The position numbers and the translations under genes are program-made. Positions 39,753-40,844 of a stretch of 64,000 nucleotides of DNA are shown one piece after another (within the stretch, counting starts at the first letter, position 1; each line of letters begins with the position of its first letter). Below the pieces are notes generated by a model. It saw only the letters and a list, made by a program, of their open reading frames with translations. It was not told the DNA's origin and did no database searches. This DNA comes from Octopus sinensis (Eukaryota). The DNA is taken from NCBI RefSeq assembly GCF_006345805.1, contig NC_043021.1, positions 1,674,001-1,738,000 of the forward strand, read 5' to 3'.

Positions 39753-39838
39753 TGCTGCTGAAGATGGTACTGAATTTAAATTGATATAGTGATTGCATTG
39801 TTCAATTAAATGGAGTCGCTTGAAACGATCGTACCGCA
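39753..39838 (+). ncRNA. Type I hammerhead ribozyme, core intact but helices partly decayed (intron 1 of the EMI gene, sense strand)
   Basis: Core CUGAAGA 39758-39764; extended, mismatched helix II (U.U at its base); GAA 39822-39824; palindromic helix III ACGAUCGU; GUA triplet; helix I UGCUG/CCGCA with one mismatch. Confidence 0.6.
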
Positions 39839-39973
39839 TTACTACTTGATATCCTGTTGCTTATTTTGATTTTACCATTTCTTAGCTCTTAGCCTCTTCT
39901 TTATTTATATTCTTTATATTTATTTATTTAATCATTTATTAATTTATCTATTTTCTCTTTCCCTTTTCTCTAG

Positions 39974-40066
39974 GCACACTGTTACATATTTAGAGCGTGT
40001 ATATTTCACCAGAATTGTCCACACACGAAAATGCAAATTGATTGTGTTTTGTAAAACCGTTTACAG
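39974..40066 (+). CDS. EMI-domain receptor, coding exon 2 (93 nt, symmetric phase 2-2, central EMI segment with 2 Cys)
   Basis: Strong acceptor ttttctctttcccttttctctag, donor GTAAGG. Open frame HTVTYLERVYFTRIVHTRKCKLIVFCKTVY resembles MEGF10 YSVTVQE...C.......C. Confidence 0.88.
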
Positions 40067-40587
40067 GTAAGGAACGTGTCTGGTTTCTGTAACTTTTAAC
40101 ATTTACTTCTTTCAGTCGTTGGACTGCTGCGGCCATGCACCACCGTCAAGAGTTTTAGTCGAACAAATCGTCCCCCGGTACATAGGGTTCTTTTTAAAGC
40201 CTGATACTTATTTTATCGGTCTCCTATATACAACTGTTAAGTTATGGAACGTAAACAAACTAACAGCGGTTGTCATGTAGTGAGGGGATAAACACAAGCA
40301 CACACACGTATGTACGTACATGCATACATACATACATACGTACATACATAAATACATACATACATACATACATACATACATACATACATACATACATACA
40401 TACATACATGCATACATACGTATGTACGTACATGCATACACGCACACATACATACGTACACACACAGACGCGTGGCCTAGTGGTTAGGCTGTTGTACTCA
40501 CAATCATGAGATCACCGTTTCGATTCCTGGATATAGCATGAAGGGTAAAGACCCCCATTGTTATATTTCTGCTGCTTTTAAATAAGT

Positions 40588-40619
<32 letters not shown>

Positions 40620-40762
40620 ATATATTATATATTATATATATATATATATATTTCGATAGGTGAATGAATTATCCTATGTTTACCGTCAACATGGAAAATT
40701 CTATGAACCGATACCAGGGTAGCAAATTCACGTCAGAAACACGTCAGAAAGAGGCTCTCTTT

Positions 40763-40844
40763 CTTTCCTGATGAGAAGATTGCATCTTGCACCGTTTATT
40801 CCTTTGGAATAAAACCATGTTGTCTTCGAAACATATGTCGAGAG
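40763..40844 (+). ncRNA. Type I hammerhead ribozyme, intact core, GUC cleavage triplet (intron 2 of the EMI gene, sense strand)
   Basis: Helix I CUUUC/GAGAG; core CUGAUGA 40768-40774; helix II GAAGAU/GUCUUC with G10.1-C11.1 and a long loop containing a uuuauucc/ggaauaaa hairpin; GAA; palindromic helix III ACAUAUGU; predicted cut after C40839. Confidence 0.8.

What the first reader, a model, noticed from the sequence alone, without database searches (positions are those of the whole stretch)
39753..40844. Two sense-strand hammerhead ribozymes bracket a skippable exon of the EMI receptor gene
Seen in sequence: intron 1 holds a type I hammerhead fold (39753-39838; CUGAAGA, GAA, palindromic ACGAUCGU helix III, GUA triplet). 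Intron 2 holds a better one (40763-40844; CUGAUGA, canonical G10.1-C11.1, palindromic ACAUAUGU, GUC triplet). Both are on the pre-mRNA strand and flank exon 2, which is 93 nt and phase 2-2, so it can be dropped in frame, losing 2 of the 6 EMI cysteines. Established: Penelope-like elements and non-LTR retrozymes carry minimal type I hammerheads that often work as dimers via a palindromic helix III, and double cleavage is how retrozyme monomers are released and circularised. Inference: co-transcriptional cutting could release a 1006-nt RNA (39834-40839) containing exon 2, bias splicing toward skipping, or lower transcript output. Caveat: the upstream copy has a U.U mismatch at the base of helix II and one in helix I, so both may be inert TE relics.
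Basis: partly seen in the sequence, partly recalled or inferred. Interest (0 to 1): 0.85.

Follow-up and report, generated by a model that had tools for sequence, protein, structure and literature searches.

The report
Transposon-borne hammerhead motifs flanking an exon
Two hammerhead-ribozyme motifs do lie on the sense strand of the introns either side of a 93-base exon, but each belongs to a separate copy of a ribozyme-carrying retroelement that is common in this octopus genome, and RNA data show the exon spliced in normally, so this is ordinary transposon cargo and shows no sign of being a gene switch.

Summary
Type I hammerhead motifs sit at 39753-39838 and 40763-40844 on the mRNA strand. 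They flank exon 2 (39974-40066, 93 nt, phase 2-2), and RNA contigs confirm the exon borders.

The motifs are not chance. A descriptor finds 5 in this window against 0.065 expected from shuffles.

Each motif lies near the 3' end of a 5'-truncated copy of a different interspersed repeat family. These families show 5' truncation, head-to-head pairs, partial tandems and microsatellite tails, which are the marks of Penelope-like/retrozyme elements. At least nine distinct hammerhead-bearing families turned up in about 180 kb of this genome.

- **Downstream motif:** identical to its family consensus and well formed.
- **Upstream motif:** degenerate. It has a U.U plus three weak pairs in helix II, and two private changes break helix I.

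No second copy of either family lies in the window to form the dimer that such minimal hammerheads need. Assembled transcripts from four runs of two octopus species all join exon 1 to 2 to 3. Unique intron sequence next to exon 2 has zero coverage.

Verdict: inert or near-inert transposon cargo of a known kind. This scan has reached the same reading many times on other DNA of this genome.

The parts
38810..38937 (+). Coding part of exon 1: ATG, signal-peptide-like start, then 'NVC'. It ends in phase 2. The RNA contigs begin at 38765.
   Evidence: Sequence. RNA contig pieces 38765-38937 joined to 39974 in 4 runs.
38938..39973 (+). Intron 1 (1036 nt, GT..AG). It holds SINE-like repeats (39058-39130, 39304-39471) and the family-1 copy.
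   Evidence: Joint 38937>39974 in all 4 runs. Repeat matches.
39618..39875 (+). 5'-truncated copy of repeat family 1, about 90% identical to other copies. The longer copies seen extend more than 1 kb further 5' and show no long ORF. The 3' end is shared and is followed elsewhere by microsatellite tails.
   Evidence: The consensus 21-mer of its hammerhead 5' half occurs 296 times in the genome at up to 1 mismatch, control 0.
39753..39838 (+). Hammerhead motif 1 (HH1), degenerate. The core is intact. Helix III is the palindrome ACGAUCGU and the triplet is GUA. Helix II is a U.U plus 3 weak pairs. Helix I is broken by two private substitutions, 39756 A>T and 39835 T>C, which hit both partners of pair 1.2-2.2.
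   Evidence: The family consensus has a perfect 6-bp helix I.
39974..40066 (+). Exon 2: 93 nt, phase 2-2, two cysteines. It has a strong polypyrimidine tract with AG, and a CAG|GTAAGG donor.
   Evidence: It is present in every assembled transcript contig.
40067..41143 (+). Intron 2 (1077 nt, GT..AG).
   Evidence: Joint 40066>41144 in all 4 runs.
40652..40743 (+). Piece 'A', preceded by a (TA)n run at 40587-40651. In other copies it lies about 58 nt downstream of the family-2 unit in the opposite orientation. Here it abuts the truncated 5' end of the family-2 copy, which I read as a head-to-head composite.
   Evidence: L002, L003, L006, L008, L010-L012.
40747..40901 (+). 5'-truncated copy (last ~155 nt) of repeat family 2, followed by a (TATG)n tail at 40902-40965. 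The family unit is about 686 bp and non-coding. It is found as tandem units (L009), head-to-head inverted pairs (L002, L006, L008) and solo truncated copies, and the best-matching copies are 95-99% identical.
   Evidence: The 24-mer of its hammerhead 5' half occurs 229 times at up to 1 mismatch, control 0.
40763..40844 (+). Hammerhead motif 2 (HH2), intact and identical to the family consensus. It has CUGAUGA and G10.1-C11.1. Helix II is 6 bp plus 4 bp around a U.U, with a 53-nt helix II region. It then has GAAA, the palindrome ACAUAUGU, GUC and a 5-bp helix I.
   Evidence: The predicted homodimer forms the double-hammerhead fold.
41144..41247 (+). Exon 3: 104 nt, carrying the 'CCKGF' and following Cys of the EMI-like pattern.

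Best explanation
Each motif is the ribozyme module of a separate retroelement insertion. Copy 1 (39618-39875) and copy 2 (40747-40901) are 5'-truncated copies of two different non-coding repeat families. Each family's master element carries a minimal type I hammerhead 40-60 nt from its 3' end.

These families spread in the manner of Penelope-like elements and their non-autonomous derivatives, the animal non-LTR 'retrozymes'. The copying would be target-primed reverse transcription, which gives 5' truncation, head-to-head inverted pairs, partial tandems and microsatellite-associated ends.

Within such elements the hammerhead is thought to process multimeric element transcripts, acting as a dimer through the palindromic helix III.

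In this gene the two copies landed independently in introns 1 and 2, in the sense orientation. As single, unpaired motifs they are expected to be inactive or very slow. The upstream motif is further degraded. Their position around exon 2 is best read as coincidence.

Shown here: the repeat membership, the family architecture, the excess of motifs over chance, and normal inclusion of exon 2.

Inferred: the mode of spread, the role of the ribozyme in the element, and inactivity in the host pre-mRNA.
For: 1. Repeat membership. Both regions match many other places in the genome, with boundaries 39618-39875 and 40747-40901. Hammerhead-half patterns occur 296 and 229 times, reversed controls 0.

2. 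Retroelement and PLE hallmarks.
- Coverage falls off gradually towards the 5' side from a shared 3' end.
- L009 holds 686-bp tandem units, each with the motif.
- L002, L006 and L008 hold head-to-head pairs.
- Copies end in microsatellite tails.
- These are the traits described for PLEs in PMC8557442.

3. The fold is selected at family level. Nine different families in about 180 kb share the same plan: core, then helix II, then GAAA, then an 8-12-nt palindromic helix III, then GUH, then the helix I complement. The helix sequences all differ. The window count is 5 against 0.065 expected.

4. Another family in the window (26020-26053, minus strand) lies about 200 nt upstream of a decayed ORF in locus L075. 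Atlas look-alikes of that ORF carry RVT_1 and Telomerase_RBD. This is a lead only.

5. The host gene is unaffected. Transcript contigs of 1461-1563 nt (275 nt in X7) in 4 runs of 2 species join exon 1 to 2 to 3. No skipping joint is listed. Depth is zero over 39883-39973.

6. No partner is available. There is no second family-1 or family-2 copy in the 64 kb. The HH1+HH2 heterodimer does not form a hammerhead, whereas the HH2 homodimer does.

7. Literature.
- Minimal PLE hammerheads have a long helix II, a short helix I and a small palindromic helix III. A single motif shows no detectable cleavage (PMC4209133).
- Retrozymes are PLE derivatives, and 42-44% of Xenopus copies overlap introns (10.64898/2026.07.22.740005).
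Against: - No reverse-transcriptase gene was linked directly to family 1 or family 2, so the PLE attribution rests on insertion architecture and motif type.
- HH2 is intact, identical to a young family's consensus, sense-oriented and only 304 nt upstream of exon 3, so slow cleavage cannot be excluded.
- The RNA evidence is contigs only. Contigs cannot show RNA ends, drop rare isoforms, and come from libraries of unknown type.
- A preprint reports mild depletion of retrozymes from introns in Xenopus, which hints that genic copies are not always neutral.
Confidence: 0.85

Rival explanations
1. The motifs are active cis-acting ribozymes. They cut the nascent pre-mRNA and so lower mRNA output or favour skipping of exon 2. 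This would be a CPEB3-like kinetic competition with splicing.
For: Both motifs are on the sense strand with intact catalytic cores. HH2 equals its family consensus. Exon 2 can be skipped in frame. There is a precedent: the intronic CPEB3 ribozyme tunes its host mRNA (PMC10919898).
Against: - Exon 2 is in every assembled transcript of 4 runs, and no exon1>exon3 joint is listed.
- Exon 2 has strong splice sites.
- The cut sites lie only 140 and 304 nt upstream of the next exon, so the time window for competition is short. Single minimal PLE hammerheads show no detectable cleavage (PMC4209133).
- Introns cut by a slow hammerhead still splice normally (PMC2995048).
- HH1 has a defective helix II and helix I.
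- Both motifs are ordinary repeat copies, not conserved single-copy elements.
Confidence: 0.05
2. Double cleavage releases a 1006-nt RNA (39834-40839) containing exon 2, which may be circularised by a tRNA ligase as in retrozymes.
For: The geometry resembles a retrozyme unit flanked by two same-strand hammerheads. Hammerhead ends are substrates for RtcB-type ligases (PMC7229834).
Against: - The two ribozymes come from different families and cannot dimerise with each other.
- Both would have to cut before splicing.
- Unique intron sequence inside the proposed RNA (39883-39973) has zero contig depth in all 4 runs.
- HH1 is degenerate.
Confidence: 0.02
3. The motifs are chance matches to a loose hammerhead consensus in AT-rich repeat DNA.
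For: Rfam models give no hit. Folding energies are no better than shuffles. HH1's helix II is very weak.
Against: - Descriptor matches exceed shuffles by about 75- to 150-fold.
- The same architecture recurs in nine unrelated repeat families, with different helix sequences that stay complementary.
- The family-1 consensus restores a perfect helix I.
- The HH2 homodimer folds into the textbook double hammerhead.
Confidence: 0.03

Closest known systems
Minimal hammerheads of Penelope-like elements (Cervera & de la Pena 2014, PMC4209133)
   Same: Type I topology, a long helix II, a short helix I of 4-6 bp and a small palindromic helix III implying dimer action. The motif sits near the element's 3' end or in its terminal repeat. 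Copies number in the hundreds to thousands. Copies are 5'-truncated, tandem or inverted, and associated with microsatellites (PMC8557442).
   Different: The helix II region here is very long (53-58 nt, with an inner hairpin). No RT/GIY-YIG ORF was found attached to families 1 or 2. Cleavage is untested.
Animal non-LTR retrozymes (PMC7229834; 10.64898/2026.07.22.740005)
   Same: These are non-coding repeats carrying type I hammerheads. Family 2 occurs as tandem 686-bp units elsewhere (L009). They are proposed to be non-autonomous PLE derivatives and are common in introns.
   Different: At this locus there is no tandem array. There are two solo, truncated copies from two different families, 1 kb apart, with a host exon between them. 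The unit of about 686 bp is larger than the typical 170-400 nt. The loop1-loop2 tertiary contacts of efficient retrozyme ribozymes are not evident.
Conserved intronic ribozymes of vertebrates: the CPEB3 HDV-like ribozyme (PMC10919898), and the HH9/HH10 intronic hammerheads (de la Pena & Garcia-Robles 2010, cited in PMC10919898)
   Same: A self-cleaving motif on the sense strand of an intron of a protein-coding gene.
   Different: By those reports and my own knowledge, the vertebrate cases are single-copy, conserved across orthologous introns and catalytically competent as monomers, and CPEB3 has a measured effect on the host mRNA. The motifs here are repeat copies, one of them decayed, with no sign of an effect.

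Membership tests
Hammerhead ribozyme, type I (motif level) | Conserved core CUGANGA ... GAAA, and a cleavage triplet NUH with H not G | tested here: met
   Both motifs meet it: CUGAAGA/GAAA/GUA and CUGAUGA/GAAA/GUC.
Hammerhead ribozyme, type I (motif level) | Three helices around the core, with helix I open | tested here: inconclusive
   HH2 meets it: helix I 5 bp, helix II 6+4 bp, helix III an 8-nt palindrome (2 bp plus a tetraloop as a monomer). HH1 does not clearly meet it: helix II is a U.U plus 3 weak pairs, and helix I has a C.U mismatch. The family-1 consensus has a perfect helix I but the same weak helix II.
Hammerhead ribozyme, type I (motif level) | A score at or above the gathering threshold with an Rfam hammerhead covariance model | tested here: not met
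   No hammerhead hit at gathering or at E<=10. The same models also miss the compact motifs at 26020-26053 and 63512-63544, so this test is insensitive for minimal variants.
Hammerhead ribozyme, type I (motif level) | Self-cleavage at the predicted site | not testable with these tools
   The runs were available only as contigs, which cannot show RNA ends.
PLE-type minimal hammerhead / PLE-derived retroelement | Long helix II, short helix I, and a small palindromic helix III suited to dimer formation | tested here: met
   The predicted HH2 homodimer forms an intermolecular 8-bp helix III with both cores open. The features match the description in PMC4209133.
PLE-type minimal hammerhead / PLE-derived retroelement | Copies 5'-truncated with a shared 3' end; partial tandems and adjacent inverted truncated copies; microsatellite association | tested here: met
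   The traits are as listed in PMC8557442.
PLE-type minimal hammerhead / PLE-derived retroelement | Linkage to an RT plus GIY-YIG ORF | tested here: inconclusive
   No ORF is attached to families 1 or 2. A sister family (window 26020-26053) lies just upstream of a decayed ORF in L075. That ORF's Atlas look-alikes include RVT_1 and Telomerase_RBD clusters. Pfam gave no significant hit.
Animal non-LTR retrozyme | Head-to-tail repeats in which each unit carries a hammerhead, so that double cleavage frees a monomer | tested here: not met
   Not met at this locus, which holds single truncated copies of two different families. Met elsewhere for family 2: L009 has a 686-bp period.
Animal non-LTR retrozyme | Monomers accumulate as linear or circular RNA | not testable with these tools
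   Contigs only. Repeat regions are covered on both strands by other copies.
Functional host intronic ribozyme (CPEB3 / HH9-like) | A single-copy element conserved in orthologous introns | tested here: not met
   Both are copies of repeat families with hundreds of members. Orthologous introns could not be examined.
EMI domain (PF07546) for the host gene | A significant match to the Pfam EMI profile | tested here: not met
   No hit for the three exon translations. The genome-wide six-frame scan does not list this locus. The exons are short, so sensitivity is low. The Cys pattern (NVC ... C ... C ... CCxGF ... C) is EMI-like by eye only.

The most novel reading that the evidence does not exclude
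The intact downstream hammerhead, possibly paired in trans with transcripts of other family-2 copies, cuts a fraction of nascent pre-mRNAs 304 nt before exon 3. Together with residual activity of the upstream motif, this would tune the output of this secreted EMI-like protein, or yield an exon-2-bearing RNA that a tRNA ligase could circularise. That would be a retroelement ribozyme pair co-opted as a host gene regulator.
Probability: 0.03. Interest if true: 0.7.

Novelty: new member of a known kind. Interest (0 to 1): 0.15.

Why it matters
The result matters mainly as a calibration. This octopus genome carries roughly 0.06-0.1 hammerhead motifs per kb, from many PLE/retrozyme-type families. 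Sense-strand intronic hammerheads, and even pairs that bracket an exon, are therefore expected by coincidence in hundreds of genes. They should not be read as regulators without RNA-end or conservation evidence.

The family-level data also document cephalopod hammerhead modules with an unusually long helix II. Rfam models miss these entirely, which is useful for anyone annotating ribozymes in mollusc genomes.

Tried and rejected
- **Rfam covariance models.** I ran them on the whole window at gathering thresholds, and on three sub-regions at E<=10. There was no hammerhead hit anywhere. I do not count this as evidence against the motifs, because clearly well-formed minimal motifs are missed too.
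- **Single-strand MFE folding.** Z-scores were not significant, which is uninformative for a motif thought to act as a dimer.
- **Pfam on host exons, and an EMI scan of the genome.** No hit, so the gene family is unverified. The spliced protein has no reference form, so I did not type it into a search.
- **Pfam on ORFs near the family-4 copy in the window.** No RT. ORF surveys of the fetched loci gave only one PLE-like fragment, in L075.
- **Random genome sampling for motif density.** Density was estimated instead from the window and the flanks of fetched loci. Those flanks are not a random sample.
- **ARAGORN on 38000-42000.** No tRNA.
- **The earlier-findings look-up by place.** It returned nothing.
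- **RNA runs.** Only contigs were available, so read ends, strand and rare isoforms could not be assessed.
- **N stretches.** The 100 N in the window lie outside the finding and were left alone. They were read as A only inside my shuffle and six-frame translation scripts.

Full report
**1. What is there**

- **HH1:** CUGAAGA at 39758-39764, a 57-nt helix II region, GAA at 39822-39824, ACGAUCGU at 39825-39832 and A17 at 39833.
- **HH2:** CUGAUGA at 40768-40774, a 53-nt helix II region opening with G10.1-C11.1, GAA at 40828-40830, ACAUAUGU at 40831-40838 and C17 at 40839.

The predicted cuts are 1006 nt apart.

The gene model is also right.

- ATG at 38810; exon 1 ends at 38937.
- Exon 2 is 39974-40066 (93 nt, phase 2-2).
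- Exon 3 is 41144-41247.

RNA contigs in four runs from four studies carry the joints 38937>39974 and 40066>41144, both GT..AG. Two coded organisms are represented. One matches the window exactly and the other differs by about 2%.

Skipping exon 2 would keep the frame: TC from exon 1 plus T from exon 3.

The 'EMI' label could not be confirmed with Pfam. It rests on the cysteine pattern alone.

**2. More than chance?**

Rfam's hammerhead models find nothing, even at E<=10. Single-strand folding is no better than shuffles.

I wrote a simple type I descriptor. It requires:

- the core CUGANGA;
- at least 3-4 bp of helix II;
- GAAA;
- a helix III closed by A15.1-U16.1;
- H17 not G;
- at least 4 of 5 helix I pairs.

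It finds 3 strict and 5 loose matches in the window, against 0.02 and 0.065 expected in 200 dinucleotide shuffles.

The other three matches are at 26053-26020 (minus strand), 52457-52381 (minus strand) and 63512-63544 (plus strand). Rfam misses these too, so its models are blind to this minimal class.

The flanks of loci fetched for other reasons hold six more matches in four further families, on L002, L007, L066 and three times on L072.

Across the nine families the helix sequences all differ but stay complementary. Helix III is always an 8-12-nt palindrome. This is the signature of a fold selected in the master elements, not of chance.

**3. Both motifs are repeat cargo**

Window 39618-39875 is a copy of 'family 1', about 90% identical to other copies. 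Window 40747-40901, with its (TATG)n tail, is a copy of 'family 2', 95-99% identical among the copies scored. Pattern counts of the hammerhead 5' halves give 296 and 229 places at up to 1 mismatch. The reversed controls give 0.

In both families, coverage by other copies falls off gradually towards the 5' side from a shared 3' end. Longer copies run more than 1 kb without a long ORF.

Family 2 has a unit of about 686 bp:

- It is tandemly repeated in L009, with the motif in each unit.
- It forms head-to-head inverted pairs in L002, L006 and L008.

Copy ends abut (TA)n, (CA)n or (TATG)n runs.

In the window, the family-2 copy is cut down to its last 155 nt. It abuts, head to head, a piece (40652-40743) that elsewhere lies downstream of the unit in the opposite orientation.

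These traits are the ones described for Penelope-like elements (PMC8557442), whose terminal repeats carry hammerheads near the 3' end:

- strong 5' truncation;
- partial tandems;
- an adjacent inverted truncated copy;
- microsatellite bias.

Animal non-LTR retrozymes are now argued to be their non-autonomous derivatives (10.64898/2026.07.22.740005).

A direct link to a coding PLE was found only for a sister family. In L075 the motif-bearing repeat of window 25701-27105 lies about 200 nt upstream of a decayed ORF. Atlas look-alikes of that ORF include RVT_1 and Telomerase_RBD clusters. This is a lead, not proof.

Octopus genomes are reported to hold recently active Penelope families (PMC13282606).

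**4. State of the two copies**

HH2 is identical to the consensus of its family. It matches the published picture of PLE minimal hammerheads (PMC4209133): a long helix II of 6 bp, then a U.U, then 4 bp; a 5-bp helix I; and a small palindromic helix III.

Two HH2 copies are predicted to fold into the classic double hammerhead, with an intermolecular 8-bp helix III and open cores. The energy is -38.4 kcal/mol against 2 x -15.5 for the monomers.

HH1 is poor. The family consensus already has a U.U at 10.1-11.1, followed by only G.U, G-C and C-G. A U.U at this position is known from axolotl HHR_Amex2, whose monomeric repeat reaches only 22% self-cleavage in one hour of transcription (PMC7229834).

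The window copy adds two private substitutions, 39756 A>T and 39835 T>C. Both fall on pair 1.2-2.2, turning U-A into C.U.

Most variation among family-1 copies sits at CpG sites, as expected for neutral decay.

**5. Do they act on the host gene?**

Nothing suggests so.

- **No partner.** The window holds no second copy of either family, and the HH1+HH2 heterodimer does not form a hammerhead. Single minimal PLE motifs showed no detectable cleavage in vitro, and dimers cleaved only weakly (PMC4209133).
- **Short kinetic window.** The predicted cuts lie 140 nt and 304 nt upstream of the next exon. Pol II covers that distance in seconds. By contrast, the CPEB3 ribozyme has about 10 kb of intron downstream and a half-life of 2-3 min (PMC10919898). 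This step is inference.
- **Splicing tolerates slow cuts.** Introns cut by a slow hammerhead are spliced as well as intact ones. Only a fast ribozyme blocks splicing (work of Dye et al. and Bentley and co-workers, summarised in PMC2995048).
- **Exon 2 is included.** Its splice sites are strong, and every assembled transcript includes it. No 38937>41144 joint is among the listed joints, although joints of depth about 5 are listed.
- **No excised RNA seen.** The unique intron bin 39883-39973, which the proposed 1006-nt RNA would contain, has zero depth in all four runs.

Limits of the RNA evidence: contigs drop rare isoforms and cannot show ends, 34 joints were not displayed, and the library types are unknown.

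**6. Is the arrangement surprising?**

The window and the locus flanks give roughly 0.06-0.1 motifs per kb on both strands. The flanks are a biased sample.

A 1-kb intron then has a few per cent chance of holding a sense-strand motif. Two flanking 1-kb introns both holding one comes to about 0.1-0.2%. Over the roughly 10^5 internal exons I assume for an animal genome, that is on the order of a hundred or more such exons.

In Xenopus, 42-44% of retrozyme copies overlap introns (10.64898/2026.07.22.740005).

Earlier notes of this scan on the same genome list several sense-strand intronic hammerheads, all judged to be transposon passengers. They also list many tandem hammerhead arrays judged to be PLE-style retrozymes. 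I treat those as leads. My own tests point the same way.

**7. Verdict**

The regulatory inference is unsupported.

The feature consists of two independent insertions of hammerhead-bearing, PLE/retrozyme-type retroelements. They are new members of a known kind, of low interest at this locus.

The residual novel reading is slow cleavage by the intact downstream motif that tunes the gene or yields an exon-bearing circle. I put it at about 3%.

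Noticed in passing
window 26020-26053 (-), within repeat 25701-27105: A compact minimal hammerhead: helix II of 5 bp with a 5-nt loop, helix III ACGAUUGU, triplet GUA. It lies in a 1.4-kb repeat whose other copies are 99-100% identical over 241 nt (at least 40 places). 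In locus L075 the same repeat lies about 200 nt upstream of a decayed ORF whose Atlas look-alikes include RVT_1 and Telomerase_RBD clusters, so it may be the terminal repeat of a recently active Penelope-like element.
   Followed up: partly
window 52381-52457 (-): A hammerhead motif with a perfect 6-bp helix I, an A-U pair at 10.1-11.1, a 58-nt helix II region and the palindrome ACAGCUGU. It lies in an older repeat family whose copies are 77-87% identical. Part of its helix II interior resembles that of family 1.
   Followed up: partly
window 63512-63544 (+), within 63318-63776: A hammerhead-like motif with a perfect 6-bp helix I and an A.G at 10.1-11.1. It lies inside a roughly 460-bp repeat that matches itself on both strands, so it is either palindromic or a head-to-head pair.
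   Followed up: partly
L072:240-309, 775-844 (-), 1134-1203 (+); L007:2877-2926 (-); L002:2721-2810 (-); L066:1255-1320 (-): Four further distinct hammerhead-bearing repeat families turned up by accident in the flanks of fetched loci. L072 has three identical copies in a tandem-plus-inverted layout. L007 has a 12-nt perfect palindromic helix III. L002 has an 8-bp helix I.
   Followed up: no
window 39058-39130 and 39304-39471 (intron 1): SINE-like repeats whose summed contig depth in the RNA-like runs is 10^4-10^5, far above anything else in the stretch. These families are very abundant and apparently transcribed.
   Followed up: no
window 40467-40545 (intron 2): A stretch with tRNA-like A-box and B-box sequences, followed by (TA)n. 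It looks like the head of a tRNA-derived SINE, but ARAGORN calls no tRNA.
   Followed up: partly
window 39756 and 39835: The two private substitutions of the family-1 copy fall on the two partners of one helix I base pair (1.2-2.2) but do not compensate: U-A becomes C.U.
   Followed up: yes
window ~58000-60750 (+): A long run of repeated open frames, all reading variants of one 20-25-residue Cys/Pro-rich peptide. This looks like a tandem minisatellite. Its nature is unknown.
   Followed up: no
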